Source of the DNA: Laetmonice hystrix
Lineage: Eukaryota
DNA: 64,000 nucleotides
Reading direction: 5' to 3'
Assembly (NCBI GenBank): GCA_965235115.1
Contig: OZ249437.1
Coordinates: 18,786,001 to 18,850,000, forward strand
Positions 25,837 to 57,198 of this stretch are shown here, in pieces (positions within the stretch are counted from its first letter, which is position 1; the number at the start of each line of letters is the position of its first letter). Below the pieces are notes generated by a model, which saw only the letters and a list, made by a program, of their open reading frames with translations, was not told where the DNA came from and searched no databases. The translations under genes and the position numbers were made by a program.

Positions 25837-28800
25837 GAAACACCAGTCCATCGTCAATGATTGTAAATTAGTTACACAAGGCCTGATATTATTATTACAC
25901 ACTGTGTGTTTTAAACCTCGAACAACCCCGACGTCTCGACACCAGACACCGACTTACATTCGGCCATTTTCACCGTGGGAAAACGTAGCCAGCCCCCTGA
26001 TTGCCAGGGACGCTAGGCTCCAGCGAGGAGGAGGTTTTTGATTTTTACCCCAGACGGGCATTTGCAGACGTTTGAGATCTCAGTAGGGATTGTCCATGTT
26101 TTAAGAGTGTCTGGAGCGATCTGCTGCCGTTACTATGGCTACAGGAGGAGGAGGAGGAGTTAGGCAGACACGTCCATCATGTCAGGCCCACCATCAGCAC
26201 TGCCTGCTGGAATATTCAATGTTAGAACGGTTAACTGTGAATTGCTGAGGTCAGAAACGATGATAACATCAAGCGGAAGGAAAGCGTGGGAAGATGAGGA
26301 CATGCGAAGGTTATAATCAGGAGATATGGTTGAGTTTGCGAAGGTTATAATCAGGAGATATGGTTGAGTTTGTGTAGGTGGACACGGTGGACATGATAAC
26401 AGGTAGTAACATTGAACGAGTCGGGTTAACTTGATGTTTACATTTTACATGTAAAGCTGTAATTGGTGAGACGTTTACATGTAGTATACCAGGTGGTCAG
26501 TGCGGCCTGTGCGCCCCTTCCCATGGATGATCTCATGGCGTTTGGCAGGACCCGCGCTGAGTGCGTAGATTTAATTTTTGGGCCGGACGCCATGATTAAC
26601 GTTATTTTGCCCCCTCCCTCCCCGAGATTGCGTCAGGACGGTGTTGGATGACATGTTAAACGTTGGTCGCCGGGCAAGTGTCGACTGTGGACAGCTTGCT
26701 GTTACCGCTAGACGACCTGCAGCCTGGGTCGAGTTGAAGTCCCGGTCGGCTCCCCTGGCAATGGGTGCTGTTGGCTGGACTAGCTGGAGCTAGTTACCAC
26801 AGCGTTCCGTCTCCAGGGCTAAGCTCCCCGAGTTATTGTTGATGTGTTGGGTTACTGTAGCATCAGGAAGCAATATTCTCACAGGAACACTTTAAACTAG
26901 CTAGATTAAGAATAAAAAGTTGGTGTTTTGTCCGTGAATGTGTGCGTATGTCTGTATGTTTGCCTTGCCGGACTTTGTAACTTAGCTATTATATATCTGT
27001 GTTGATACCTGAGGATGATGAAGTGATGTTATCTAAGGATGAAGATCTGCTAGTGTTTCATGCTCATTGTTGCGACACTTCAGTTTATTCCCAGTATATA
27101 GATACACATCTTCCCATGACATAAAACATGAGCGTCATGTTTCAGGAACAAAGTTCTTGTGTTGTTTTAACTTAATTCTTAAAAAAAAAATATTTGTAGG
27201 CAGAGCTAAAGAAAAAATCTCAAACTTACAGAACTTCAGTGAATTTTAGTGCGGTTGGGGGTAGCACGGGAAAGAAGTTGCCCTAAAAGATCTACTTGGT
27301 AAATGTCATGTTGATTGGGACTAGTGTGTAACTTACGAGTAGGTAGTAAAGTATTATATTGAGGTTTGGCCCTGATGTGCACATCCAGTTTTGGGCAGGG
27401 ACCGCTAGCATGTTCTTCATGACAAACACATTGAACACCTCAACAACCACAAGTCCTCTGTAGTGACCTGGCTACATCTTCAGACAGAGAGACAACTAGT
27501 ACACAACACCAACAAATCTCTGATGGTCAGTTCCTTCTGTCAGGTGGTGTTAGTTGGAACCTCTCTCCCTCTCCGTACTGCCTCCTTGTCCTGCTGGCCG
27601 ACTGTATGCATTGTTAGAGATCGCCATCGTACAGGTATCTGCCCCAGAGAAGGAGAAAGGGGGGAGGAAGGGGAGGAGAATAGGAGTACACTGCCATTGA
27701 CATCTTGAAATCATCATCGGGAGATTGACATCAATAGTCAGCACAGTCCTCCACAAGACATGTGACCAAGTAGCAGACGTTAGTCACATCAGCCTACATG
27801 TCAAATCCAATTGCTCAAACGTTTCTGATTGCATGGCTTCAGCTGTACAACCAGTTGCTTTATTGTCTACCATAGTCTGAAAATGAAAATCACAAAGAAA
27901 GCCGTGCTGGGCGTATTTTCCTTAGTGAATCTCGTTGTGTTGTCGAGGTGCTGACGGAATGGAGGATGGTTGTTGAGTGTGTTTGTCAGGTTGGTTCTGG
28001 TGGTCCAGGCATTGGTGGCAGTCAATCATAGTGTCATTTCAATCTAGATAATTATATTTTGTCTGCTACACGGAACTGATAGAATATTCATAAACCCCAC
28101 CACCCTGTTTTAAATTGCATTTGCTGAACATTCCGAATACTCTTATTGAAAATATATATATTGCAGGATAATATAATATTGATGTAATGCGGTGTAATTA
28201 TCTCGGTAATCAGTAATGTTGATCAATGAGTGTTTCTGATTACTGTGTACCGGTATGTATGACGATGTGGCAATTCAGTTGTATCTGGACCAAATATTAC
28301 ACAACAGTGACTAGAAAGAATTTATTTTTGTTACTTATTTTCTGTTTACTTGTTTCCCAATTCTCTCATGTTTATTGTTTCATAAACGAAATATTCCATG
28401 TTAATATTTTAAGTATATTTACATAATATATAATCAGATGAGCAGAACTTATGGAAGAGCTATCTAGTCTCAGATGCAGTTGACTGTGTTAACCATCTCT
28501 GCGAGTCTGTCGAGAACGACCAGCCCCCCACATGTTGATTCTTTTACAAGTACAATCGGAATAATCGGTAAATATATAATATATGATGATTATGAATGAT
28601 AATTCTACATTGTATAGTCTACTCCTTCGGATGTATACATACCAGTAATACTTGTACAGTAGAGGTTGCTATAGATACTCTGTGACTATTGTGTATATCT
28701 AGGTGAAACAGAGATAACTTAAAATGTCTAGATGCACAGCTTCATGGTTTAATGATGTTGGAAAGTTGTATATTGGCTCCAATGAAGGGGAATGATACAA

Positions 28801-41933: not shown

Positions 41934-42049
41934 TCAAGCTCTACTAGACTGGCCCGCAGTCTCTAGCTGCACCCCAGGGCTGGCGCTCTCGGGACTTTGA
42001 CCTTCACTCGTCTGTCCAGACAAGGGGCTCTGACGCGAGCCGCCATCAA
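41934..42049 (-). CDS. Membrane protein last coding exon (VDGGSRQSPLSGQTSEGQSPESASPGVQLETAGQSSRA*)
   Basis: Long polypyrimidine tract plus tttcag| in phase 1; TGA stop; AATAAA on - at 41525-41530. Total CDS 2541 nt = 846 aa + stop. Confidence 0.75.
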
Positions 42050-42127
42050 CTGAAAGCAGAGAAGACGCAGAGAAGCCAATATTAGTCGGGTATGTAAACA
42101 AGGATGAAACCATACGGCAGATGACCG

Positions 42128-42325
42128 ATACGTCACACCGATACGTCACACTGGTACGCCACACAGATGCGTCACACCAATACGTCACACTGATACGTCA
42201 CACCGATACGTCAAACAGATACGTCACACCGATACGTCACACTGATACGTCACACCGATACGTCACATCAATATGTCACACTGATGCGTCACACTGATAC
42301 GTCACACAGATACGTCACAAAGATA
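42128..42325. repeat. 13-bp repeat (gatacgtcacacc), about 15 copies
   Basis: Visible in the last intron of the membrane-protein gene. Confidence 0.9.
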
Positions 42326-42698
42326 TGCCGTTATACTAACAGACAAAAGGCATTACCAGGATTAACCTCAGTGGCGGATTCAGGCTTATTCTTCGATGGG
42401 GGTGGGTGGGGCACAGCTGTGTGGCTCGACTGGCAAGAGTCAGCTCAATACTTTCAGTAGAACCCTACTGTCAGTTCTAACCAATGACGTGCCTTTACTA
42501 CAGAAATACAGCCCCATCCTGACAGCGGAGAGCTACTCCTAGCAATCAATAATCTGTACAGACTTCAAATATTACATTCTGAGCAATCAATAATCTGTAC
42601 AGACTTCAAATATTACATTCTGAGCAAACAAAGAAAGGAATGATGGAGTGCTACGGTTAATCACGTAGATGTGTGTGAGTCAACTTTAATGTTGCCAG

Positions 42699-43285
42699 AC
42701 CTGAATCCTACACAATCCCCTGACTTTGTGTCTGACTTTGTTTGGGACCTTGTTTGGTTTGCCGGTTGTACGAAGCCTGAATCCTACACGATCCCCTGAC
42801 TTTGTGTCTGACTTTGTGTGGGACCTTGTTTGGTTTGCCGGTCGTACGAAGCCTGAATCCTACACGATACTCTGACTTTGTGTCAGACCTTGTTTGGTTT
42901 GCCGGTTGTATGAAGCCTGTATCCTACATGACCCCCTGACTTTGTGTGGGACCTTGTTTGGTTTGCCGGCCGTACGAAGCCTGAATCCTACACGATACTC
43001 TGACTTTGTGTCAGACCTTGCTTGGTGTGCCGGTTGTATGAAGCAAGCCTGAATCCTACATGACCCCCTGACTTTGTGTGGGACCTTGTTTGGTTTGCCG
43101 GTCGTACGAAGCCTGAATCCTACATGACCCCCTGACTTTGTGTGGGACCTTGTTTGGTTTGCCGGTCGTACGAAGCCTGAATCCTACACGATACTCTGAC
43201 TTTGTGTCAGACCTTGCTTGGTGTGCCGGTTGTATGAAGCCTGAATCCTACATGACCCCATGACTTTGTGTCAGACCTTGTTTGT
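42699..43285. repeat. About 62-72-bp minisatellite, about 9 copies
   Basis: gcctgaatcctacacgat...gactttgtgtgggaccttgtttggtttgccggtcgtacgaa. Confidence 0.93.
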
Positions 43286-43836
43286 TTTTGGCAATCGTAT
43301 AACGACCACCTAAAACCCCCAAGCTAATACTGGGGTGGTCAATCAATATTCTGCGTGGGAGGTTATAGATCCGGTAATACAACAGATGGGCCCTGAATCA
43401 ACACTGATGTTAGAGCTAGTTCTGTACTTGGAAGTATAAGAACGTCAACATGCCCCTTCCCTTGAATCATGAAGACATGTGACCTTACACAAATCTGATC
43501 ACCTTTACAACTGTTTAACACATTTTAGTTCAAAGTCGTAATGGCTTGAACTTCGGTCCCAGTAAAAAAATCAATAAAAGTTGTTAGTGTTTGGTCAGTG
43601 TTTGCACGAGTATGTTACGAGAATAAATGAAAAATATCGTCTGCGATTTAATCCCCTTTCTTCTCAATGGAGAAAATTCAGTAGCTGCTGCTTCTACCTC
43701 GGGGCAGGATGCATGTGGCTGTGTGCACTCTACCCAGTTCATCAAATCCTTGATCCACTTCCTTGAGTACATGGAGATAATGAGTTAGAAAAAGACTAAT
43801 TCTCTCCCTCGCGTGATTTACACACCATTCACTCAC

Positions 43837-44210
43837 CCTCTCTCAAGGACGTGGCCGACGTCCTGGTTGCTCCTGGTCCGGGTAAATCTGGGCTGAGAAC
43901 TGCTGATCCTGAACGGATCAACGTTGGCATTGACCCCTCAGGTGTCCTTGACCCTTCAGGTGTCCTTGACCCTTCAGGTGTCCTTGACCCTTCAGGTGTC
44001 CTTGACCCCTCAGGTGTCCTTGACCCTTCAGGTGTCCGTGACCCTGCTGATGTCGCCCTCTGGTGAGGAGAGGACGCAGCCAACCGTTCGACAGTGCGTG
44101 GACTGGCTGCTGTGACGGCCAGTCTAGACAAACTCTGCCCTGACCCCGACCCGTCAAGAACAACCAGTCTCGTGGTCAGCTTTCTGGCACCATCCAGAGA
44201 AGACAGGCGA
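43837..44210 (-). CDS. Membrane protein coding exon 7, S/P-rich with six GSRTPE repeats
   Basis: ttttgcag| acceptor, G|gtgagt donor, 374 nt, phase 2-1, open frame. Confidence 0.8.
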
Positions 44211-44644
44211 CTGCAAAACAAAATCAGCATACCATGGTACCTGTACATGTATGTTTTGGGGCTAAAATTTAAGAACAGTAATGATTTCTAGAATGATGTC
44301 ATGGCATGTTTCAGACATGGTGTAGTATTTTTAAGGCCTAGTATGTCGTAGCACTGACTGGTATTTGATCATGGTGAATGACGTGGGATACAAGAGAAAG
44401 TCTTACAAAACCTGCCACTCATCGTGCAGGGAATACGTGTTAAAATAAATGTAAAAAAAGTGAAAACGGCAGAGAAGCTCCATACGAGGTAATCTCATTT
44501 AATTTCCATTTGAACTAGAAAGTGAGCCCAGCTAAATGAAGTGATGTCGGTATAATGGTGGAGAAAAAGGTTAAGTGCCCCTATAACAATAGCATTGTTC
44601 TGTTGATATAATTTTAAGAAATTCCCTCTTCCAGCTTCCCATGC

Positions 44645-45549
44645 AGAATTACTTATGAAGTACACTGTCAGTGGACTGACTCCTCCTCAACGGTTAAGTT
44701 CTAACTATAACTATCTGGTATGAAGTACACTGTCAGTGGACTGACTCCTCCTCAACGGTTCAGTTCTAACTATAACTATCTGGTATGAAGTACACTGTCA
44801 GTGGACTGACTCCTCCTCAACGGTTCAGTTCTAACTATAACTATCTGGTATGAAGTACACTGTCAGTGGACTGACCCCTCCTCAACGGTTCAGTTCTAAC
44901 TATAACTGTTATATCTGGTATGAAGTACACTGTCAGTGGACTGACTCCTCCTTAACGGTTCAGTTCTAACTATAACTGTTATATCTGGTATGAAGTACAC
45001 TGTCAGTGGACTGACTCCTCCTCAACGGTTCAGTTCTAACTATAACTGTTATATCTGGTATGAAGTACACTGTCAGTGGACTGACTCCTCCTTAACGGTT
45101 CAGTTCTAACTATAACTGTTATATCTGGTATGAAGTACACTGTCAGTGGACTGACTCCTCCTCAACGGTTCAGTTCTAACTATAACTGTTATATCTGGTA
45201 TGAAGTACACTGTCAGTGGACTGACTCCTCCTCAACGGTTCAGTTCTAACTATAACTGTTATATCTGGTATGAAGTACACTGTCAGTGGACTGACTCCTC
45301 CTCAACGGTTCAGTTCTAACTATAACTGTTATATCTGGTATGAAGTACACTGTCAGTGGACTGACTCCTCCTCAACGGTTCAGTTCTAACTATAACTGTT
45401 ATATCTGGTATGAAGTACACTGTCAGTGGACTGACTCCTCCTCAACGGTTCAGTTCTAACTATAACTGTTATATCTGGTATGAAGTACACTGTCAGTGGA
45501 CTGACTCCTCCTCAACGGTTCAGTTCTAACTATAACTGTTATATCTGGT
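44645..45549. repeat. 70-bp minisatellite, about 13 copies
   Basis: tatgaagtacactgtcagtggactgactcctcctcaacggttcagttctaactataactgttatatctgg. Confidence 0.97.
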
Positions 45550-46054
45550 AAATACTTGGCAACCATCACGGAGCCGTGATTTCCTAACGACATTTATAGC
45601 CACTGCTATTTGTTTGCTGGCCTATAGCTGCCAAGAAAAAGCAAAACCACTAATATATTTCTGGGGGTCTGCAACTGTGCATTATCTAAACTTACAGACA
45701 GTGCCAAATGGTGTCCTTGCCCTGAAAGGTATATTGTTTACGGACCTCGAAGTTTTGGGGCACCCCCAAACATGGTTATATGAGATGTCCAGTTGTTGTA
45801 TGGAGACAATATATGTCAGCTGAATGTCCTATTCTATTCGTAAAGTTTACCATGATAAAACAGCAGGAATAATATACAAACACCTGTTTACACATAAACT
45901 GCTGCGGTCTCATCCATCTCTCTGTATCGATTGCTACCTCTGATCGCATACAGCCGAGATGGGAGGCACACATAATGGTGGCCCTGGGTCACCTTTCCTT
46001 GAGAGCATGGGAGACTACTATAGTGTGTCTGGGAGGTGGTAGCGGTCTGATACA

Positions 46055-46330
46055 TGTAGCGGTCTGATACATGTAGCGGTCTGATACATGTAGTGGGTTG
46101 ATACACGTAGCGGGGTGATACACGTAGCGGGGTGATACATGTCCCGGCTGACACATGTCCCGGAATGATACACGTAGCGGGCTGATACATGTAGCGGACT
46201 GATACATGTAACGGGTTGATACATGTAACGGGTTGATACATGTAACGGGCTGATACATGGAACAGAATGATACACGTAGCGGGCTGATACATGGAGCGGG
46301 TTGATACATGTAGCGGGATGATACATGTAA
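46055..46330. repeat. Degenerate 17-bp repeat (gatacatgtagcgggct), about 16 copies
   Basis: Direct inspection. Confidence 0.9.
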
Positions 46331-47796
46331 CGAGATTTTGTTTAGATACTGGGACTGGGACCGGGACCGGGAATTTTTATTCCTACGCTAGCTCGGGATG
46401 AAAGCGGAGCTCAACCAATCAGCTGTCGAGCTGCCCTTTGTTTGTTGTTTGTTGTTTTCCTCAAATCTGTCAAAATGGGTTAGGGATAGGGATAGTTATA
46501 TTACAAATCTTGTAGAGTCCGGGTTAGAGGGGTTAGAGTACGAGTTTGGGGCGCGGAATAATGCTAAATACGAGACGTTACCATGGTGAATCTAAACGCG
46601 TGGTAGCACAATCTCCGTGGGGATCGACTAGTTATACAAAAACTCTCAGTGCCATTCATATTATGTGACATAAGAAAAGGCATCTTTGCGGCATTATATC
46701 CTGTTGCCATACTCGCGTTACTGCCACATGGGACCTATTTGTTTAGATTATCGATTTATATCATATTATAAACTAACATAACAACCTTTAGTTTAAGATT
46801 AAATCTGATTTTCAGTGAGGCAGTATTACCAAACATATTGCTACTCAACGTTTACATTACAGTTTCCGAGCGTGACAGCCAGTAATTGACATTTTGTACA
46901 GAGGGTTCCATCTCCGAGCTCTGCATAAATGTAGATCCATAGCAAAACAAGGACGCCACTGTTGTGTAGGTTAATAGTCTGGCAGTACACAGTATGCATA
47001 CAATACTGATATACCACTGTACTAGAGAAAAGGCCTACTAGGCAGACCGCAAAACGAAGCTGGCCGTGCATGTATTACATCCCTGATGTTATCTTAAAGT
47101 GGGGAATCTCCCTAGATCAAGACATATTTGAAACCTTCTATCTCAGAACCGCTTCACCGGAAGTACAGCTAAATGCCATCTTTTCGAATTCATGCTTGTC
47201 GTACATTTCTGATTGGTGTAAGACGCTGAGCTCCCCAAAACCATTGTGATAAATTTGTTAATTACTTCCCCTTCAAAATGATACATTTGTCTTATTTCCT
47301 CTGTATTTAGAGGCGATGGATCTGAGCAAGCTCAGGCTTGTGTCTATTCGGTTCGAGTCCCACTCCTGCCCAATGCTGCCAACTAGCTGGGTTATCTAAG
47401 TCGGGCCCGTATTCCCAAAGTAGAAGTATAGAGCCCTGTGGTGGAGATAGATTTGTTTGGCGCTGTGAATGGGAACTTGAATCCGTACATCGTGTTCGGT
47501 GGAGTATTTCAGAACACAACAGATGGTCTGACGTCACCTTGGACATATATACCACATATATACCGGTACCCTGTCCATGTATATGACTCTATTAGATCCC
47601 TGACCGCCTGGTGCAGTTTGAACGCTACCGATGGCTTATTGCCGCACATGTCGAATATGGAGTTTCGCCTTCGCAGAACACAAAAAGAACTTTAACCAAC
47701 TCCCATGCTGCCTAGCACATGACGTGCACTCATTAGACGATATGCCAGGAAACCTGACTTTGAAATATGAAACGGATGTGAGATAATGATATATAC

Positions 47797-47885
47797 CTGT
47801 GGCTGCGACTTCCCATGGGAACGCTATCAATGACGTGAGACAGGTCCATGGAAATGTTGTCCGTCAAGATATCCGTGACGTCATC
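47797..47885 (-). CDS. Membrane protein coding exon 6 (DDVTDILTDNISMDLSHVIDSVPMGSRSH)
   Basis: ctgtttcag| acceptor, AG|gtatat donor, 89 nt. Phase 0-2 exactly bridges exons 5 and 7. Confidence 0.8.
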
Positions 47886-48345
47886 CTGAAACAGACATAG
47901 AACCATCATTATCGGGATGCAGGACCTCATCTACCCGGCAGGCTTTCATCGCTGCCCTTTTGTGGTAAAAATAGTATCCGTCTTCAGAATAATATAAGTG
48001 TAACCAACACATAGTGTACAGTGGTGTCGCAAACTGCTCAAGGTTAGGGAGGGACAAGCTATAATAGTAGCTGCCTTGTTATCGTAACTATATGATTGTG
48101 CCATGTGTAAAATAAAATCAAATTTAAAATGAAGAAAAACAGTAAGCTTAACGGTAAGATGTCTAAGTGTAAAAAGAATTCTTTTGGGGCAGGTTCTAGC
48201 TGATACCCTTGCCCACATATCTAACATCAGGGGGCCGTACTCCCTGCCCCCCCCTCTTGTTTCAATACCCCTGTTGTAGATTCGGATGCATCCTTCAAAC
48301 CGGTGATCATCCACTGCGACATCAAGTGAGAGAAAAAAGATCTTT

Positions 48346-48556
48346 GTGAACGAGTTCTGTCAGTGGTGTTTATTATTGGGACGACCCACACCGAGTTGGT
48401 GGTCTCCTATCAGACGTGAGATGGTATCCTCGAGACGATACCAGCATTCTGTGAACGAATTCTGTCAGTGGTGTTTATTATTGGGACGACCCACACCGAG
48501 TTGGTGGTCTCCTATCAGACGTGAGATAGTATCCTCGAGACGATACCAGCATTCTA
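48346..48556. repeat. 105-bp tandem duplication
   Basis: gtgaacga(g/a)ttctgtcagtgg at 48346 and 48451. Confidence 0.95.
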
Positions 48557-51328
48557 CCTGTCATCTATCACTATAAAACCTCCGGTGAATAGATTCAACG
48601 CCTTCACCTGTAAATGTGCAGCTCACAGGGCGGGGGTCTGCTTCCATTTCAAGCTGCTTTATCTGCTCCGCGGATGGAGTCGACATCCATCCGGCAGTAA
48701 GTACTGCGATGTTCCGACCAGCAATGTACATTATGAGGACAATAACTTGGACCATGGAAGCGAGGAGATGATAATACTGGTTGGTTGTTTATGTTCACTG
48801 ACCCTCTGTGTCCAGCAAAAAAACATGTGAACCCCATTAGATATTTCTGAGGGTGATGAGTAATTTCTGAGGGCGAAGAGTAATTTCTGAGGGCGGGGAG
48901 TAATTTCTGAGGGTGAGGAGTCAAGCACCAATAGGTAGGTCCATATTCTGCAGGGGTGCCGTTACCAAACAAAGACACCCAAGGGAAATAAGGACATTTC
49001 AAACGAAAGGGATTGAAAGGTTGCACTGGTCTGACACTTGAGATGGTCAATTCAGACCAATAATGCCCGGCCAGGCCGTCCTTATACGACAATGATCACA
49101 CAGTCAGCAAAAAAAGTTACCTTATAACAGTAGCGGCCCACTTTCAACAAGTTCGACAAAACCGTGCCATCTAGGATTCAAAGGTCACGGATAGTAATGG
49201 GAAGCCCCTGGTAGAGTTTAGCTATTTTATGTATAGGCCTACTATAAAAACAAATGAATGATTTCGCCTTCCGTTTGAACAGCGCTGATTATACATTTAA
49301 CAGAATGATGACAAAGCGATTACATTCGCTGTTACAAATGGAATGAAATTGCGTAAAAAGGCCAAACGCAAATGTTGCTAGACCAGATTAAATTTGAAGC
49401 CATTGCCGGAAGTAAGTAATCGTATTATACGAACTGACTGTAACTTAGAAATATCATTACAACAAACGCGGCGTTCCATTACAGATCTTATTTCCAGGAT
49501 CTATTAATTCTCTATTTTTAATCTCTGCACCGTATCCTCCGCAGTTTAAGGAAGAATAGTAGCAGAACTTGTATCGTAACGCATCGGATTCGACCTGACA
49601 TACTTCAATTTCAATTCAAGCAGTGAGGACACATGTAAAAACAATATTACATGATGAAACTTTGAGAGAGGATCACGAATACAAGCACAGTTGTACTGTG
49701 TGAAGGAGAGGCGTAACGTCATTTGTTTGGTAACGAACGTACCACTGAGAAAAACAAACAGTTCCACTTTCTGTTACAACCCACGCGCCCAATATTGTGC
49801 TATACAAGCTGCTTTATCAGAACCCAAGTTAGGAACAGTTTTATGTGATCCATCAACTCACCATTCTAAATATACAGGAACATTAGAAGAGTATACCTCG
49901 ACCCTAACAGACATTGGGGTGGCCTGGCCCCGGCGTCGTGAACAGCATTGGCTCGGCGTATCGATTGTGGGCTACAAAAGTATTGATTTGTACCCCCTAG
50001 ACAAGCTCGACCTTGAACTTGTTCCGTTCCCATTCCGCGCTTGGCTGTGGTGCCACGGAGAAAACGCCGGAGGAGAAGGAGGAGTAGGAGTAGGAGGAGG
50101 GGAGGAAGGGGCGAGAGGAGGAGGAGGAAGATGGAGCCTGTAGTCCACACTGGACGCCTTCAAGGGCCTTCTACTCAACTGTAACTGGTACAGAATGTCG
50201 TTCACCGTCAAACGGAACCACTCACTAGTCTACGCCACATCACAAATGGATGGAACGTCTGCTAGCTGTGACGTATACCATCACAGAATCACGAAGTTGA
50301 CCTGAAGTCGGCCCTAAATAACACATTTCTAATGTAACACCATCACTGGGTTCTAATTCCTGGAGCCATACAGCGTCCATACACGCACACACCCTAACAC
50401 CTGACTATATAATACCCCCACCCACCCACGCACAGCATGACGTGCCTACATGTCACAGATCATGTAGTTAGTAAACGTGGGCGGGATATATATCGGCCAA
50501 TGTGTGTCTTGGAGGTTACCATGGGGACAACGTGGACAAACAATACGGACAATTCGTCCTGTAAGATTGTACAATTATAGCCTAATGCTCTCAGATTTCG
50601 GGGGAAACCAAGGAAGCTTCCCTACACGACAGGAACTCCACTCCGCTCGGGCCTGAAGGCATGGCGTGAGTCTAATACACGTGTACTGCGCCCGGGGCTT
50701 TTCCTTATTAACAACATCATTAACTTGTACAGAATGCAATGCGACGCGACTTGCTAATAACGATTTCGTTAAGTCTCTGATTTACGGTGAGGTAAGTTAT
50801 CAGCATGATCCGTGATTATCGACGACCTAATAGTTAAGACAGGTCGCACTTATCTCACAATGCCATTAATTGGAATGAAGCAATCGTTAGACTAGCAATA
50901 ATCAGATAGAGAAGAGGCCACCAGAAATATATGAATAGAAACCAGACTAATAATACTGGCCAAGAGTCCATCCGGATATACTGGATTATTGAAACCTTTC
51001 CGACCCGGTAATAGACCACGGTGCTGTCAACTTCAACCCATGTTTGTGTGCAGATGTGTTGGCTTCATCGTTTCTTTGTTACATTAACAGAACTAATCTT
51101 TTAGCATCCACTCCGGGGCTTCATCTGCCATGTCACAAGTACCCGGTACATTGTAACTGTGAAAACCTATGAAGAATTTTGAATAAATGAGTTTACCGTT
51201 AACTTTGACTGAGAATCTCCACGTGAGAGGATGTGTACCGTGATGAAGCCAGGTATCACTTACCCCTGCCAAGCCTCTGGTAATGAGAATTGTGGTGAAG
51301 CATTCCAGCTGTCCCCAACTATGATTTC

Positions 51329-52025
51329 TTTCTATGGTTTCCACCCAGAGTTTAACTTTAATCCCTGACTTACATGGTGGCTAAACTCTCGGAACACATG
51401 ACAGATTACCTGGAATGTGTTATTAGTGTAGTCAGACGACAGCGGGTGATTTCTATGGTTTCCACCCAGAGTTTAGTCCCTGACTTACATGGTAGCTAAA
51501 CTCTCGGAACACCTGCAGATTACCTGGAATGTGTTATTAGTGTAGGCAGACGACAGCGGGTGATTTCTATGGTTTCCACCCAGAGTTTAATCCCTGACTT
51601 ACATGGTAGCTAAACTCTCGGAACACCTGCAGATTACCTGGAATGTGTTATTAGTGTAGGCAGACGACAGCGGGTGATTTCTATGGTTTCCACCCAGAGT
51701 TTAATCCCTGACTTACATGGTAGCTAAACTCTCGGAACACGTGCAGATTACCTGGAATGTGTTATTAGTGTAGGCAGACGACAGCGGGTGATTTCTTTCT
51801 ATGGTTTCCACCCAGAGTTTAATCCCTGACTTACATGGTAGCTAAACTCTCGGAACACATGACAGATTACCTGGAATGTGTTATTAGTGTAGGCAGACGA
51901 CAGCGGGTGATTTCTATGGTTTCCACCCAGAGTATAATCCCTGACTTACATGGTAGCTAAACTCTCGGAACACCTGACAGATTACCTGGAATGTGTTATT
52001 AGTGTAGGCAGACGACAGCGGGTGA
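51329..52025. repeat. About 114-bp tandem repeat x6 containing an exon 3' end and splice donor
   Basis: On -, each unit = last 40 nt of exon 5 + CAG|gtaatc + about 74 nt of intron. Confidence 0.95.
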
Positions 52026-52155
52026 TGTCTGGTCCATTCCTCGACCTCCTCCAGTATAACGTCATTATCGAGTCCATCCAAGGTCAGAGCTGTCTGTGGG
52101 CGGTCGTCAGGTTTCTCTTCTAACTCAGGGTACATGTCCTCATAGTACCCGTCAT
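51986..52155 (-). CDS. Membrane protein coding exon 5 (DDGYYEDMYPELEEKPDDRPQTALTLDGLDNDVILEEVEEWTRHHPLSSAYTNNTFQ)
   Basis: gaccag| acceptor, CAG|gtaatc donor, 170 nt, phase 1-0. Confidence 0.85.
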
Positions 52156-52793
52156 CTGGTCAAACATTGATACTGCTTATTAAACTTTATATAGACAGCA
52201 TGACCCCCCCCCCACCTCTCCAACATATAACTACAGACCTACTGGCCAGGTATGTGTTTTTTTATCAAGGGTATATAGAAGGGCTCTTATAATAGTATCT
52301 CCTCGGGCATCAAGCTTAAACCTTTACACGTTTTTAGACAATTAGTAAAATTACAAAGCAGATTCAAGCAAACCACTGATTACCAAGGTTACTGGACCCA
52401 TTCACATTGCATAAGGTATCAACCTCTGGCACCTTTAATTACTAATAAACAAGCTTTGCTGGTGTTGCAGGACATTAGACGTTCTTCCTATGTGTGCCGA
52501 TGTATGTATGATGTATGTAGTCTATGTAATAATATATGAATATATTGCACGTACATATATTTAAATACTAGTACATGTTTTTGTACACAATGTACCGATA
52601 CCTGCATGGGTGTGTCAGAAGTAATTATTTCACTACACTTTATGCCACATAAGTAAATGCTTGAACACGTATGGTATTTATGTTTTCCAATATAAATATT
52701 CATCACATCATAAAGAGTGGTACAATACCTCTGGAGTAGAAAAACTTAATTATATCTAAAAATATTGTTTATTCCAATACTGTCTGAACTCAC

Positions 52794-52895
52794 CTGCTTC
52801 ATATTCCATGTTTTCACGTCCATAGACTTTCCTGACAGCAGGCATTGTCAAACGAGCTTTTTCTTTCTTATCCCGCCGGCCATTTAGGAATATTC
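52794..52895 (-). CDS. Membrane protein coding exon 4 (GIFLNGRRDKKEKARLTMPAVRKVYGRENMEYEA)
   Basis: ccattcag| acceptor, G|gtgagt donor, 102 nt, phase 1-1. Confidence 0.88.
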
Positions 52896-53390
52896 CTGAA
52901 TGGAGAGAAGACAGATAGCCCATTGTGCCAGTTTCCTATTCTCAGCAAGGATGAGACAGTTTAAGGATTTATAACAAAAGTAAAACAGGCTCTCCTTTTA
53001 TTTGTTAAAAAGATACCTTTTACATTACTCTAGCTGATAAGGATGTGCACAATCCTTGCCGGTATCTCTTTGCCTCAGCTGGTTATTAAAACAAAGAATG
53101 AAAAAAAAAAGATATTTTTTTCAAACATTTGTCTCAGACTTCTTATTATGCCTGATCACGTTTGAGATTAACATGTTTATTAATGCTTATATCTGGTGAA
53201 GAACATGACTTTCCATGCAATTCATCTTCCTGTAATTTATGTTATAATAAAGGAATTCATCCCTTTTGGATTAAAGAAAATACAGATTACCATATTGATG
53301 ATCTTTTTCTTTATTAAAGAAAACACGATTAATTCTGCGAAGCATTGGTGATATTTTTAATGAAAAAATATAAAAAAGAAGATATCCTAC

Positions 53391-53537
53391 CAAGGCAATA
53401 CATTTTCAGAAGAAGTCTGCGTTTGACTGGCGTCATAAGAATGAAGTCATATTCCCTTTGAGCCAGTCGGCGGACCATTCCTGGCATAATCTTCAATAAC
53501 TCTGCTGCTGTGTGGCGGATGGACTCCTTCACACTCT
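53391..53537 (-). CDS. Membrane protein coding exon 3 (ESVKESIRHTAAELLKIMPGMVRRLAQREYDFILMTPVKRRLLLKMYCL)
   Basis: atacag| acceptor, G|gtagga donor, 147 nt, phase 1-1. Confidence 0.9.
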
Positions 53538-53980
53538 CTGTATCATGGAAACAAAATGGTTAACTTAGTGTGTATACAAGATGCTGGGAAAGATTTTGTC
53601 CCTGGCATAGGCAATGGAAGATAAATATGCACATCGAGTTGGGGGGGGGGGGGGGAGACCAAAACCAACGCTTTTAAAACATAAAATGAGAGTCACTTTG
53701 GAAAGGACAATGAAAGTTTTGTATATAGGTCTCCATTGATGAAAATGATCCTTGCTATCAAGTTTCATTGTGGGAAACTCTCTGAGAAAATATTTCTGAA
53801 GAACACAGAATGGCATTTTCCCAATGCTTACAGAAGTGAACTGCGGGGTTTTATTTACGGTTACGTAAGCGCAGCACTATCATTGCGAGACTGCTATATC
53901 CTTCATGGTTGCATCAGAGAGTGTGGTTGCATATCTCCATGAAATTTGGGCATAAGAAATGTTAATCTGTCACTCTTCCT

Positions 53981-54265
53981 ACAGGCCAAACCTAATCCTA
54001 AAACCTCCAGTCCCGGTCTCCAACCCTCCAAACCTAATCCTAAAACAGGTCAAACCTAATCCTAAAACCTCCAGTCCCAGTCTCCAACCCTCCAAACCTA
54101 ATCCTAAAACAGGCCAAACCTAATCCTAAAACCTCCAGTCCCAGTCCAACCCTCCAAACCTAATCCTAATCCTAAAACCTCCAGTCCCGGTCTCCAACCC
54201 TCCAAACCTAATCCTAAAACAGGCCAAACCTAATCCTAAAACCTCCAGTCCCGGTCTCCGACCCT
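53981..54265. repeat. About 65-bp C/A-rich repeat, about 4 copies (aaacctaatcctaaa)
   Basis: Direct inspection. Confidence 0.9.
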
Positions 54266-54503
54266 CCTTATCAACACCCAAATAAACAGACTGTCACAGC
54301 TACAGCAAGCCCCCCATACAACAGAGACCTCTAGCGGTAAGCAGTACTGACCACCCTGCCACCTGACGGGCATCTGCAGAACTGATGCCATCAGTGGCTT
54401 TTTGCACAGCACTTAAGAAAAAACGAGGTTTGGCGCTAGACAGTAGCTTAGGCTACCAATGGAAAAAAAATATTCTAAGCTGTGTACAGTGATGATTACC
54501 TAC

Positions 54504-54689
54504 CTGCAAACAGTGACTTAGGAGCGATTTGTGAGTGAGCCTCCACGAGTTCATCAAATACATCCCACAGGGTGTCATGTATTGGGTCATGTAGATGTTC
54601 TGCTTCTCGACAATAGGCGTTAACAACGTGGATTTGGCGGCACAGCTCATGGGCAGGGGCAAACATCGGTGGCATGGAAAGAGACTTTT
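54504..54689 (-). CDS. Membrane protein coding exon 2 (EKSLSMPPMFAPAHELCRQIHVVNAYCREAEHLHDPIHDTLWDVFDELVEAHSQIAPKSLFA)
   Basis: tttttcag| acceptor, G|gtaggt donor, 186 nt, phase 1-1, open and protein-like. The supplied ORF track shows a different frame here. Confidence 0.9.
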
Positions 54690-54866
54690 CTGAAAAATAA
54701 GGACAAGAAAAGGCATAAAGTCATGAACAGCTAGTAGGTCTTATAGACCTGGGTAAAATTCTTCAAACAATTAGACCATTATATGGTAGTGTGTGACATT
54801 TTAAAACGTACAGAAAGGGATATGTTTATGTAATTTTGTCCCCATGATATCATATCCATGACGTAC

Positions 54867-56223
54867 CAATGAGGGTCCGTGACTGAATGATGGCTCGGAC
54901 ATATTTCCTTGTCGACGGAGTCAGTTTACTGAGGCCTTCCGATGTCATCGAAGGCCACAGTGGATGAACGATCTTCTGACAGCATTCACACTGTCTGATG
55001 ACGAGGTAGATGACAAACGTTAGAGCTCCACAGATCCACGTACAGTTGATGATGAGGAGCACACTATTCATGTAGGTCGGAGTCAACCAAATAGATGCCA
55101 AGGTGAATGAAGTGAAAGATGTTCTCAATGAGCCTAACAAACAGTTCAGAACAAGGCAAAGGTAGCTGAATATGATGAAGATATTGAACGAAGTGACTCG
55201 GTACGGCCGAATGATGACGAAAGTTATTAAAAGCACCAGAAAAATGCAGTTAATGACCAGGGCTCCTATGAATATGTGGTTGAACGTCACAGCAACCACA
55301 GCCAAAATGAAGAAGGAGAAAATGAAATGAAGAGCACGGAAATGGCACCCATGCTTTTTGAAGGAAGCAAATATGTGGAAACCGCCCACAACGTACTGGA
55401 TGTCCAAGTTCTGTACATATTCTGTCTCTTTAAGTTGTAGATATCCCTCGTGTCGGTCTGAGGTCATATCCAGCATCTCAGCTTTTGTTCGTATTATCAT
55501 CCATGCTGGTAGCAAGCCGTAAAGACAAACGACACCAGCAATAGCAGGGACGATGTAGGCCCAGTAAATGTTATCAGTGTAACACTTCACGTCATTATGT
55601 ACGTCCATCACACCCGTGTCTGTGCAGTGGAACAGGCGAGCTACAACCACCCCGAGCGGCAGACAAACAACTTGGGCTATCACTAAATATACCCTCTGTA
55701 AATGGGCAATTCTCACCATCATAAACGGGTGTTTCTGATACGTTATCACGAGGTAAGCAATAACAAAGGCTGAGAGAGCCAAGAAAACAAAGACAGCCCA
55801 GAAAAGTAATATGTGCCAATAGTTGATGGGTACATCACTGCTTGGGGTGAAATGACCCTGCACCTCCTTGTAGCTGCCGTTTTGTTGTACTTTGGCAAAT
55901 TCCCAAACATCTAGATTGAACAGGAAGATGAAGCTGGAGCTTTTTACCCATTTTGTTGGGAATGGCCAACGTAAAGCGAGCTGCTGGACAATGGCAAACA
56001 ACTGAATGACGTGCAGGAGGAGCAAGAGGGTGTCGTTCAGAATGAGTGATGTCCCACGTTTTTTATGGTCTGCAAATAAAACTTTATCATCATCCCTGGC
56101 TTCCTCTATATCCTCATCGTCTGTTTCCATGGCAATGGTGACTGGTAGTCTGTCGTCTGAGGACGCCATCTGCTGCGATCCAGGCAGCAATGGGTAGGAC
56201 TCGGCTGTATCAGGGCTGGACAT
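54867..56223 (-). CDS. Uncharacterised multi-pass membrane protein, first coding exon (about 8 TM helices)
   Basis: 452-codon open, non-repetitive frame from ATG (ccaacATG) with about 8 hydrophobic 20-25-aa segments. Acceptor ttctccag| at 56261; donor G|gtacgt at 54866. Confidence 0.92.
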
Positions 56224-57096
56224 GTTGGTTCAGGACAATTCCCAGTTAGTCATCGTCTAGCTGGAGAAAAAAAATATCAACAATATGTTAGATCTCTCTA
56301 CATGTTCTTTCTACAAAGGGTACTCTTTAGGCTATTAAGTCAAGACAAACATCCCCATTTAAATTTGGTACTCCTGGGCACAATAGACAGACTAATAGTA
56401 AAATACATGTTCATGTGTCTGTGTAGCTTTAATTTAGGACGTATTTCTGAAATAATATTTATTAGGCCTAATGGTAAATAAAAATTATTATAACTATTAT
56501 AACTATAACTATTAATGGTAAATAAAAAATTATTATAACTATTACCTAATGGTAAATAAAAAAATTATTATAATTTTAATGCCGGTAAATAAAAGATTAT
56601 TAAAACTAAAATTAAATAATCACTAAAAATTTAAAGAACTGAAAATATTTTACTGAATTTCTTCACTAAAACCCAAGTTCCAAAATCCAAATGTATTCAT
56701 GAAATACACCTACCTGATAATAAAATATGAGTTCACAATATTTAACTATTTTAAGTTAGTCTTGAATGTTCCACTTCCTCGTCAAGTTGTTAATCCCGTT
56801 TCACAACACTTCGAGTTTCGATCCGGTAACGCCGTATAACGACTAACGCCAGTAACGGTAAATCGGTTCTCCAAGCTTAGCACGTTTACTCACACTCAAA
56901 ATCAAATTTATCAGTAAACTTATATATCCATACTGCTATAAATAGACCTTTACTTTAGTTCTATCTTTGTTACTCCTTTGCTTATTTACTAACCTAAAAG
57001 TTCAACTTGTTCCCCGCCATTTACACATAACGGTACAGATAACGGTACAAACCAAAACAAACACGCACCTGTTCACGGACAGCCATGTTGTTTGTG

Positions 57097-57119
57097 TGAC
57101 GTCACGTTGCTACGGTGAT
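57097..57119. promoter_or_regulatory. Perfect CRE (TGACGTCA) adjacent to an RFX X-box-like site (GTTGCTACGGTGAT); candidate promoter of the membrane-protein gene
   Basis: Motifs at 57097-57104 and 57106-57119, directly upstream (on -) of a short candidate first exon ending in CAG|gtgcgt at 57069. Confidence 0.55.
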
Positions 57120-57198
57120 AGAGCGACCTTTCACCCCAGGATGGCCACGTGGCTTTGTTTACATGCAGCGGGCGCGGACGAAGTCCGTCTGGGGCCTT

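What the first reader, a model, noticed from the sequence alone, without database searches (positions are those of the whole stretch)
41934..56223. Orphan 846-aa multi-pass membrane protein with a non-repetitive cytosolic domain: candidate novel ciliary or endolysosomal channel-like family
Eight phase-consistent exons give about 8 TM helices, with a luminal Cys pair (FHC...VKCY) and an RPY motif after TM6. A roughly 200-aa helical domain follows (PPMFAPAHEL...NAYCREAE..HDPIHDTLWD...RRLAQREYDF...KRRLLLKMY), then a disordered tail (seen). The TM layout reminds me of the TRP-like/PKD2-Flc membrane domain of fungi and of related protist membrane proteins, but here it lacks a large ectodomain (inference, not a database hit). 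I recognise no named gene. Together with the X-box/CRE promoter and the N-terminal sorting motif, this is the best candidate in the window for an undescribed system.
Basis: partly seen in the sequence, partly recalled or inferred. Interest (0 to 1): 0.7.

Follow-up and report, generated by a model that had tools for sequence, protein, structure and literature searches.

The report
Unnamed animal relative of fungal Flc/Pkd2 proteins
This is a real, expressed gene for an eight-helix membrane protein from an old, unstudied family found in marine invertebrates and flagellated protists; it is distantly related to the fungal Flc/Pkd2 "TRP-like" calcium-handling proteins and has a fold that no one has solved.

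Summary
The gene is real. A transcript-like contig in public run X4 joins exons 1 to 5 exactly at the predicted GT-AG borders and runs on into exon 6. Exons 7 and 8, and so the 846-aa length, are not verified.

Exon 1 folds with high confidence (pLDDT 88, pTM 0.86) into eight transmembrane helices. Exons 2 to 4 encode a five-helix cytosolic domain.

No Pfam family and no solved structure matches. The protein is not lineage-restricted. Single-copy orthologues, all named "uncharacterized", occur in annelids, molluscs, a nemertean, a bryozoan, echinoderms, a hemichordate and amphioxus. More distant members occur in a choanoflagellate, a jakobid, a malawimonad, oomycetes, Rhodelphis and Ancoracysta.

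The top 12 fold matches among reviewed proteins are Flc1-3, YOR365C, S. pombe Pkd2/Trp1322/Trp663, and Dictyostelium SadA and TmcB/C. Twelve of 112 relatives give sub-threshold PF06011 hits. It is not a canonical TRP or polycystin channel.

The ciliary reading is unsupported, because the X-box is no better than chance. Channel activity is inferred only.

The parts
54867..56223 (-). Coding exon 1 (residues 1-452). It holds the disordered cytosolic N-terminus, all eight TM helices and the PLWPSM exit motif.
   Evidence: ORF. Donor at 54867 joined to 54689 in the X4 transcript contig. AF2 pLDDT 88.4.
56185..56202 (-). N-terminal acidic dileucine-type motif E-S-Y-P-L-L (residues 8-13).
   Evidence: A PL[LIMV] motif lies in the first 45 residues of most family N-termini. 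37 of 61 also fit [DE]xxxL[LIMV]. Its role as an adaptor-binding sorting signal is inferred from the known [DE]XXXL[LI] rule.
54991..56043 (-). Eight-helix membrane domain (residues 61-411). TM1 61-83, TM2 135-163, TM3 166-197, TM4 218-249, TM5 295-312, TM6 317-338, TM7 344-369, TM8 382-411.
   Evidence: AF2 model med9f579b20fd; coordinates. Fold matches to Flc/Pkd2/SadA proteins.
55582..55632 (-). Outer (luminal or extracellular) beta hairpin between TM3 and TM4, bracketed by C200 and C214 (FHC...VKC).
   Evidence: Both cysteines are at least 90% conserved in 62 sequences. Strands are seen in the model. The disulfide itself is inferred.
55417..55458 (-). Conserved cytosolic helix DRHEGYLQLKETEY (residues 256-269) between TM4 and TM5.
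   Evidence: H258, E259, K265, E266 and E268 are at least 90% conserved. Helix 255-270 in the model.
55198..55209 (-). RPYR turn after TM6 (residues 339-342).
   Evidence: R342 is invariant in alignment A1. The same Arg is invariant in A3 and A5.
54504..54689 (-). Exon 2: first part of the conserved cytosolic C-terminal domain.
   Evidence: Both borders are joined in the X4 contig. 72.6% identical to amphioxus and brittle-star orthologues by tblastn.
53391..53537 (-). Exon 3: second part of the C-terminal domain (RRLAQREYDF...KRRLLLKMY).
   Evidence: Joints in the X4 contig. 67-71% identity in tblastn to the annelid, bryozoan, amphioxus and brittle-star orthologues.
52794..52895 (-). Exon 4: end of the last long helix and a basic linker.
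   Evidence: Joints in the X4 contig. Weak tblastn matches.
51986..52155 (-). Exon 5: acidic, disordered tail. Its 3' end and donor lie in the first unit of a 114-bp x 6 tandem array (51329-52030).
   Evidence: Joint at 52155 and loose end at 51985 in the X4 contig. Tandem array.
47797..47885 (-). Exon 6 (DDVTDILTDN...), tail.
   Evidence: The 30-nt continuation of the X4 contig maps uniquely to 47855-47884. The acceptor AG lies at 47886-47887. The donor at 47796 is predicted only.
41934..44210 (-). One phase-consistent version is 44210-43837 plus 42049-41934, and it includes an 18-bp x 6 repeat encoding (SRTPEG)n.
   Evidence: Enumeration of open, phase-consistent chains only. Repeat. No transcript or homology support.

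Best explanation
The locus encodes the single-copy orthologue of an ancient, unnamed eukaryotic membrane-protein family.

Shown:
- The architecture is a short disordered cytosolic N-terminus with a conserved acidic-dileucine-type motif, then eight TM helices.
- The outer face carries a conserved Trp/Pro-rich loop and a Cys-bracketed hairpin.
- Next comes a five-helix cytosolic domain, the most conserved part among animals. A disordered tail follows.
- The membrane domain is a remote relative of the PF06011 'TRP-like' module. That module is found in fungal Flc1-3, Pkd2 and TrpR and in Dictyostelium SadA and Tmc. This protein lacks their signal peptide and lipid-binding ectodomain and has one helix fewer.
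- It does not have the six-helix fold of true TRP or polycystin channels.

Inferred:
- By analogy with Pkd2, Flc and TrpR, the protein most likely mediates or controls Ca2+/cation flux across the plasma membrane or an endomembrane. I put this at about 0.3-0.35.
- It is probably sorted by adaptor complexes through the N-terminal motif.
- It is probably regulated, or coupled to partners, through the C-terminal domain.
For: Gene and expression:
- Transcript joints in run X4.
- Single copy in the 627-Mb genome.

Family:
- 195 representative clusters at E<=1e-3.
- Every named member is 'uncharacterized': Capitella, Patella, Watersipora, Branchiostoma and Amphiura; Tubulanus, Haliotis, Ptychodera, Dreissena, Potamilus, Gefionella and Rhodelphis; sea urchins and Batillaria; Salpingoeca, Nothophytophthora, Andalucia and Ancoracysta.
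- The named animal sequences group by taxon in a tree of the family (deuterostomes, molluscs, annelid-related), as expected for vertical descent.

Fold:
- pLDDT 88.4, pTM 0.86. The full-length orthologue gives pLDDT 84.6, pTM 0.79.

Link to PF06011:
- The top 12 AFDB Swiss-Prot matches are all Flc/Pkd2/Trp663/Trp1322/YOR365C/SadA/Tmc-type proteins. Probability is 1.00 and E is 4e-4 to 2e-2. Rank 13 falls to E 0.35.
- AFDB clusters list 'TRP C-terminal domain' proteins at E 1e-6 and TM 0.5.
- Atlas structural neighbours include PF06011 clusters.
- PF06011 is the only recurring Pfam family among weak hits: 8 of 50 distant members, best E 5.5e-5, and 4 of 62 close members. The hits fall on the same C-terminal helices of the profile.
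- The protein-language-model search also finds a PF06011 cluster at 0.91.

C-terminal domain:
- Found next to the TM domain in nearly all full-length members, protists included.
- 61-64% identical to deuterostome orthologues, against 32-38% for the TM domain.

Calcium link:
- Reconstituted S. pombe Pkd2 passes Ca2+ on membrane stretch (PMC9727806).
- TrpR is a Golgi protein affecting Ca2+ (PMC8618638).
- Cryptococcus neoformans Flc1 controls Ca2+ homeostasis (PMC9600462).
- The Rhodelphis member carries C-terminal EF-hands.
- One structurally neighbouring Atlas cluster has EF-hand members.
Against: - The window protein itself gives no Pfam hit. PF06011 found nothing in a six-frame scan of this genome.
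- All PF06011 hits in relatives lie below the curated cut-off of 28.5 bits.
- Fold similarity to Swiss-Prot members is moderate (TM 0.38-0.46, rmsd 8-20 A) and rests on predicted models on both sides.
- I could not run a profile-profile comparison, because no PF06011 sequences could be fetched.
- No member of this family, and no structure of any PF06011 protein, has been solved. Whether even the fungal proteins are pore-forming is still described as 'putative'.
- Some superfamily members (SadA) are adhesion or receptor proteins, and Flc proteins were first described as flavin carriers.
- There is no localisation or physiology data for any member of this family.
Confidence: 0.6

Rival explanations
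1. The protein is a non-conducting receptor or scaffold. The eight-helix module senses a membrane or luminal cue, and the conserved cytosolic domain recruits effectors. This would resemble Dictyostelium SadA (adhesion) and the many protist proteins that fuse this module to ligand-binding ectodomains.
For: - SadA and TmcB/C are among the top fold matches.
- AFDB-cluster and Atlas neighbours carry ephrin-receptor-like, FN3, laminin-EGF, solute-binding or beta-helix ectodomains, and TIR_2 domains.
- The cytosolic domain is the most conserved part in animals, as expected for a protein-interaction surface.
Against: - This family has no ectodomain to bind a ligand.
- The characterised fungal relatives give Ca2+ phenotypes (PMC9727806, PMC8618638, PMC9600462).
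- Conserved polar residues sit inside helices: Q74 is invariant and N347 at least 90% conserved.
Confidence: 0.22
2. The protein is a small-molecule carrier of endomembranes, in the sense of the yeast 'flavin carrier' annotation of Flc1-3.
For: Flc1, Flc2 and Flc3 are among the best fold matches. They carry that name in Swiss-Prot.
Against: - No fold match to any solved transporter above noise.
- No internal repeat or inverted-repeat architecture was detected by the fold searches.
- The flavin-carrier role is itself indirect (my own knowledge of the literature, not tested here).
Confidence: 0.1
3. The protein is a ciliary membrane channel under RFX/FoxJ1 control.
For: - All lineages found to carry the family build flagella or cilia.
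- A CRE palindrome (57097-57104) and an X-box-like site (57106-57119) lie about 0.9 kb upstream of the ATG.
Against: - The X-box has one mismatch, and such sites are at chance frequency: 9 seen, 6.3 +/- 2.7 expected.
- No vertebrate, insect or nematode was seen among the named members, although these animals are ciliated.
- There is no expression or localisation evidence.
Confidence: 0.06
4. The protein is a divergent member of the canonical TRP/polycystin (six-helix, tetrameric) channel superfamily.
For: Only the historical name 'TRP' of PF06011, and noise-level TRPM3/TRPA1 rows (E 0.3-1.5, TM about 0.1).
Against: - Hundreds of TRP structures are in the PDB, yet Foldseek gives no match at E<=0.001 for either model.
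- VIA-align gives a best Z of 9.2 over 110 residues, within the helical-bundle noise range.
- No Ion_trans or PKD_channel Pfam hit.
- Eight helices, not six, and no pore loop.
Confidence: 0.02

Closest known systems
Fungal TRP-like proteins of Pfam PF06011: S. cerevisiae Flc1/Flc2/Flc3/YOR365C, S. pombe Pkd2/Trp1322/Trp663, A. nidulans TrpR, C. neoformans Flc1
   Same: The multi-helix membrane module is shared. Foldseek aligns residues 135-451 (TM2-TM8) to their last seven helices with probability 1.0. Relatives of the window protein give sub-threshold PF06011 hits on profile positions about 195-411 of 426. Both have a cytosolic C-terminal tail.
   Different: - No signal peptide and no ML-like/TRP_N lipid-binding ectodomain.
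- Eight rather than the nine predicted helices (10.1101/2022.08.11.503631).
- A highly conserved five-helix cytosolic domain, where Pkd2 has a mostly disordered, dispensable tail.
- Below Pfam's threshold.
- Found in animals and flagellated protists rather than fungi.
Dictyostelium SadA, TmcB/TmcC and DDB_G0281931; protist 'TRP C-terminal domain' receptors
   Same: The same membrane module, matched over almost its whole length: query 38-419 for SadA and 56-451 for DDB_G0281931; TM about 0.5 for the protist cluster representatives.
   Different: Those proteins carry large extracellular domains (EGF, LRR, ephrin-receptor-like, FN3, solute-binding). This family has none.
Animal polycystin-2/TRPP and other true TRP channels
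   Same: Only the shared name, and a proposed link to Ca2+.
   Different: The fold differs. There is no match to any solved TRP channel. There is no six-helix voltage-sensor-like plus pore layout.

Membership tests
Unnamed eukaryotic family (e.g. Capitella CAPTEDRAFT_219939, S. purpuratus LOC576785, B. belcheri LOC109480348) | End-to-end sequence similarity of the membrane domain | tested here: met
   E from 1e-206 to 1e-48 with 81-99% query coverage in all but one of the 26 hits (the 345-aa fragment P0021 covers 73%). 46 cluster representatives at E<=1e-30.
Unnamed eukaryotic family (e.g. Capitella CAPTEDRAFT_219939, S. purpuratus LOC576785, B. belcheri LOC109480348) | Conserved cytosolic C-terminal helical domain directly after TM8 | tested here: met
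   Exons 2-3 are 61-73% identical to orthologues from five phyla by tblastn, apart from one distant unnamed member (P0026) at 47% over exon 3. Jackhmmer finds the domain in nearly all full-length members.
Unnamed eukaryotic family (e.g. Capitella CAPTEDRAFT_219939, S. purpuratus LOC576785, B. belcheri LOC109480348) | Signature residues (Q74, D105, P189, C200/C214, H258-E259, R342, W423-P424) | tested here: met
   All are present in the window protein. One exception is the near-invariant His at position 220, which is Tyr here.
Unnamed eukaryotic family (e.g. Capitella CAPTEDRAFT_219939, S. purpuratus LOC576785, B. belcheri LOC109480348) | Orthology (single copy, position in the family tree) | tested here: met
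   One locus in the genome. It nests within the clade that also holds the annelid Capitella in an otherwise taxon-congruent animal subtree (FastTree, midpoint root, supports not printed).
Pfam PF06011 'TRP' (Flc/Pkd2 TRP-like) | Score above the curated Pfam cut-off (28.5 bits) | tested here: not met
   No hit for the window protein. Best relative is 22.6 bits, E 5.5e-5. The six-frame genome scan is empty.
Pfam PF06011 'TRP' (Flc/Pkd2 TRP-like) | Shared fold of the membrane module | tested here: met
   The top 12 Swiss-Prot model matches are all of this group, with probability 1.00. 'TRP C-terminal domain' clusters match at TM 0.5. Both sides are predictions.
Pfam PF06011 'TRP' (Flc/Pkd2 TRP-like) | Signal peptide plus ML-like/TRP_N ectodomain (PF14558/PF02221) before the membrane module | tested here: not met
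   Sixty disordered residues precede TM1. There is no Pfam hit.
Pfam PF06011 'TRP' (Flc/Pkd2 TRP-like) | Nine transmembrane helices | tested here: not met
   The model has eight helices. Nine are reported for Pkd2, Trp663 and Trp1322 (10.1101/2022.08.11.503631).
Pfam PF06011 'TRP' (Flc/Pkd2 TRP-like) | Ca2+ permeability or an effect on Ca2+ homeostasis | not testable with these tools
   Needs reconstitution or genetics. It is known only for fungal members (PMC9727806, PMC8618638, PMC9600462).
Canonical TRP/polycystin channels | Six-helix subunit with pore loop; similarity to solved TRP structures or to the Ion_trans/PKD_channel Pfam families | tested here: not met
   The best TRP row has E 0.31 and TM 0.10.
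RFX-regulated ciliary genes | Consensus X-box near the promoter, more than chance | tested here: inconclusive
   A one-mismatch site lies at 57106-57119. The window holds 9 such sites against 6.3 expected. The transcription start is unknown.

The most novel reading that the evidence does not exclude
This family is an ectodomain-less branch of the Flc/Pkd2/SadA superfamily that dates back to early eukaryotes and is kept in marine invertebrates but apparently lost in vertebrates. Its members would form a previously unrecognised class of stretch- or osmotically-gated Ca2+-permeable channel. They would have a fold absent from the PDB and a dedicated cytosolic gating or assembly domain.
Probability: 0.2. 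Interest if true: 0.8.

Novelty: new variant of a known kind. Interest (0 to 1): 0.55.

Why it matters
The PF06011 'TRP-like' proteins have been studied almost only in fungi and Dictyostelium. Their structure and pore are unknown, and I found no described animal member.

This locus shows that animals keep a streamlined relative. It has a very strongly conserved cytosolic domain: about 62% identity between a lophotrochozoan and deuterostomes. Neither domain has a Pfam model.

The family offers a compact target of about 600 ordered residues for solving the superfamily's fold. It is also a candidate Ca2+/osmotic-response component in sea urchins, annelids, molluscs and cnidarians, where genetics and single-cell atlases exist. 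Finally, it is a case of an ancient eukaryotic membrane protein that appears to be missing from vertebrates.

Tried and rejected
- Sequence search of the PDB with exon 1, with the TM profile and with the C-domain profile gave nothing meaningful.
- Foldseek against the PDB with both models, and VIA-align against 48,161 chains, gave only helical-bundle noise: best E 0.31 to 0.36 and best Z 9.2 over 110 residues.
- Two profile searches of the 5.8-billion-protein index (A2, A5) were meant to bridge to annotated PF06011 proteins. They returned only the query's own clusters, because the word index was saturated. As a result no hhalign against true PF06011 sequences could be made.
- The Atlas search of the C-terminal domain alone gave no usable relative.
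- The homodimer prediction of residues 36-452 returned 'no answer' (score 0.00, folded without an alignment). This is evidence neither for nor against oligomerisation.
- The run search found no run recorded as RNA. X4 nevertheless behaved as a transcript assembly.
- Literature searches for the accession names of orthologues and for InterPro/PANTHER identifiers found nothing.
- I did not fold or search the window's own spliced full-length protein, because it has no reference. The annelid orthologue P0013:45-660 was used instead.

Full report
**1. The gene is real and its first six exons are verified**

The minus strand holds a 457-aa open frame at 56223-54850. Five orthologue-supported segments follow it (tblastn). 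With canonical GT-AG sites they are:

| Exon | Coordinates |
|---|---|
| 1 | 56223-54867 |
| 2 | 54689-54504 |
| 3 | 53537-53391 |
| 4 | 52895-52794 |
| 5 | 52155-51986 |

Together they give 1962 nt, or 654 aa, in frame.

No public run is recorded as RNA. One of the four holders, X4, covers only exonic bins. It has a 982-nt contig whose four joints coincide with these borders. Each skipped part reads CT..AC on the plus strand, which is GT..AG on the minus strand. The same contig runs 168 nt beyond 51986. The 30 letters shown map uniquely to 47855-47884. That fixes exon 6 at 47885-47797 behind an AG acceptor.

Exons 7 and 8 are not supported by anything but open frames. Seven phase-consistent chains give 846 aa. 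One is 44210-43837 plus 42049-41934, and it contains an 18-bp x 6 repeat encoding (SRTPEG)n. An acceptor 38 nt before the ATG suggests an untranslated 5' exon. The gene is single-copy in the 627-Mb assembly.

**2. Anatomy**

With a 62-sequence alignment, exon 1 folds at pLDDT 88.4 and pTM 0.86. Its layout is:

- Residues 1-35 are disordered.
- There are eight long helices: 61-83, 135-163, 166-197, 218-249, 295-312, 317-338, 344-369 and 382-411.
- Short helices sit in the 84-134 loop (RWPFP...FNLDVWEF).
- A small beta hairpin at 198-217 is bracketed by C200 and C214.
- A cytosolic helix at 255-270 carries DRHEGYLQLKETEY.
- An RPYR turn follows TM6.

Basic residues flank TM1 on the N-terminal side (HKKRG) and fill the TM4-5 and TM6-7 loops. 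An NGS sequon and the cysteine pair sit in the opposite loops (read from the spliced translation printed).

Invariant or nearly invariant positions are Q74, D105, P189, C200, C214, H258, E259, K265, E266, E268, R342, N347, W423 and P424.

The full-length annelid orthologue (P0013:45-660, 63-sequence alignment) folds at pLDDT 84.6 and pTM 0.79. It adds five cytosolic helices after TM8, then a tail with pLDDT below 50.

In the window protein this C-domain (residues about 456-590, exons 2-4) is 61-64% identical to amphioxus, brittle-star, sea-urchin and annelid orthologues. The membrane domain is only 32-44% identical. Jackhmmer finds the C-domain next to the membrane domain in nearly all full-length members, protists included.

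The N-terminus carries E-S-Y-P-L-L. A PL[LIMV] motif is present near the start of most family members, usually with an acidic residue four positions before it. This fits the known [DE]XXXL[LI] adaptor-binding signal; that reading is inference.

**3. Relatives**

There is no Pfam hit for any exon or for full-length orthologues and no PDB sequence hit. The family itself is broad, with 195 representative clusters at E<=1e-3.

Named members are all 'uncharacterized' or 'hypothetical'. They come from:

- Capitella, Watersipora, Patella, Branchiostoma and Amphiura.
- Tubulanus, Haliotis, Ptychodera, Potamilus and Dreissena.
- Lytechinus, Strongylocentrotus and Batillaria.
- More distantly, Gefionella and Rhodelphis.
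- Salpingoeca, Nothophytophthora, Andalucia and Ancoracysta.

Atlas clusters add Cnidaria and Oomycota. A FastTree of 108 membrane domains groups the named animal sequences by taxon (deuterostomes, molluscs, annelid-related). The window sits in the clade that also holds the annelid Capitella, and the protists lie outside the animals. No support values were printed and the root is a midpoint root.

I saw no vertebrate, insect or nematode among the named hits. This is absence of evidence from capped lists, not a survey.

**4. Link to the fungal TRP-like proteins**

Three lines agree.

(a) Fold. Against AlphaFold models of reviewed proteins, ranks 1-12 are the following, all with probability 1.00 and E from 4e-4 to 2e-2:

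- DDB_G0281931, Flc2, S. pombe Pkd2, Flc1
- SPCC1322.03, SadA, YOR365C, Flc3
- SPCC663.14c, TmcC, C. neoformans Flc1, TmcB

Rank 13 drops to E 0.35. Among AFDB fold clusters the orthologue scores TM 0.85. Three further unnamed proteins score TM 0.64-0.74; from their accession prefixes I believe these are stramenopile proteins, but the organism column is blank. 'TRP C-terminal domain' proteins and many ectodomain-bearing proteins then score about 0.5. The Atlas gives the same picture.

(b) Sequence. PF06011 is the only Pfam family that recurs among weak hits. It appears in 8 of 50 distant members, best E 5.5e-5, which remains below 0.01 after correcting for 112 proteins. It also appears in 4 of 62 close members. 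The hits always fall on the last helices of the profile.

(c) Language-model features place a PF06011 cluster at 0.91.

Against membership in the narrow sense:

- Every hit is below the 28.5-bit cut-off.
- The window protein and its genome give none.
- The ML-like ectodomain is missing.
- There are eight helices, not nine (10.1101/2022.08.11.503631).

I could not run a profile-profile comparison, because PF06011 sequences could not be fetched. I therefore file it as a distinct family within the same superfamily.

**5. It is not a true TRP or polycystin channel**

Neither model matches any solved structure. Foldseek's best E is 0.31 to 0.36 with TM about 0.1 to 0.15. VIA-align's best Z is 9.2 on 110 residues, which the tool's own note places in the noise range for helical proteins. 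The fold of this superfamily is therefore unsolved.

**6. Mechanism**

What is known of relatives:

- Pkd2 reconstituted in vesicles lets Ca2+ through on hypo-osmotic stretch, and mutants blunt Ca2+ spikes (PMC9727806).
- TrpR is a Golgi or endomembrane protein affecting Ca2+ transients (PMC8618638).
- C. neoformans Flc1 controls Ca2+ homeostasis (PMC9600462).
- Within this family, the Rhodelphis member ends in an EF-hand pair. A structurally neighbouring Atlas cluster also has EF-hand members.

I therefore favour a Ca2+/cation-conducting or flux-controlling role at the plasma membrane or an endomembrane. Adaptor-mediated sorting would act through the N-terminal motif, and regulation through the C-domain. 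All of this is inference; I put it at about one in three.

A non-conducting receptor or scaffold role (SadA-like) is the main rival. A carrier role is a weaker one. A homodimer prediction gave no verdict.

**7. The ciliary idea**

A CRE palindrome (57097-57104) and an X-box-like site (57106-57119, one mismatch) exist. One-mismatch X-boxes are at chance frequency in this window, with 9 seen and 6.3 +/- 2.7 expected. The only perfect match lies elsewhere, at 26129.

All carrier lineages are flagellated, which is compatible with the idea but weak. The apparent absence from vertebrates argues against a core ciliary role.

**8. Verdict**

It is wrong on 'orphan' and unsupported on 'ciliary'.

The finding is a new variant of a known kind: an unstudied, ancient, ectodomain-less family of the Flc/Pkd2/SadA superfamily, with a new conserved cytosolic domain.

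Noticed in passing
window 51329-52030: A 114-bp unit is repeated 6 times (95% matches). It copies the last codons of exon 5 together with its GT donor, leaving six look-alike donors in a row. The X4 transcript contig uses the first one (51986).
   Followed up: partly
It lies in an open frame on the gene's strand.
   Followed up: no
window 44654-45550: A 70-bp x 13 satellite (98% matches) lies inside the presumed intron 6. Further arrays lie at 42124-42325 (13/52 bp), 42807-43288 (64/196 bp), 46039-46329 (17 bp) and 53981-54256 (22-110 bp, in intron 2).
   Followed up: no
window 56260-57120: A polypyrimidine-AG acceptor ends at 56261, 38 nt before the ATG. A possible donor (CAG|GTGCGT) at 57069 lies just downstream of the CRE/X-box-like module. 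Together they suggest an untranslated first exon. If spliced this way, an upstream ATG at 57086 would open a 10-codon uORF. None of this is verified by transcripts.
   Followed up: partly
P0148 (Rhodelphis marinus, 1123 aa) and P0098 (Nothophytophthora, 1009 aa): Distant family members carry extra domains. P0148 has an EF-hand pair at residues 1049-1112. A kinesin motor domain (E 1e-77) occurs in one distant member, probably the oomycete P0098, judging by the 1009-aa 'Kinesin motor domain' row. The latter may be a gene-model fusion. Several protist members also hit Drc1-Sld2 in their tails.
   Followed up: partly
Read-laying table 3, window 50400-56300: The three genomic runs of the same sample (X1-X3) differ from the window at dozens of positions and at several small indels. 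These are mostly intronic, as expected for heterozygosity or another individual.
   Followed up: no
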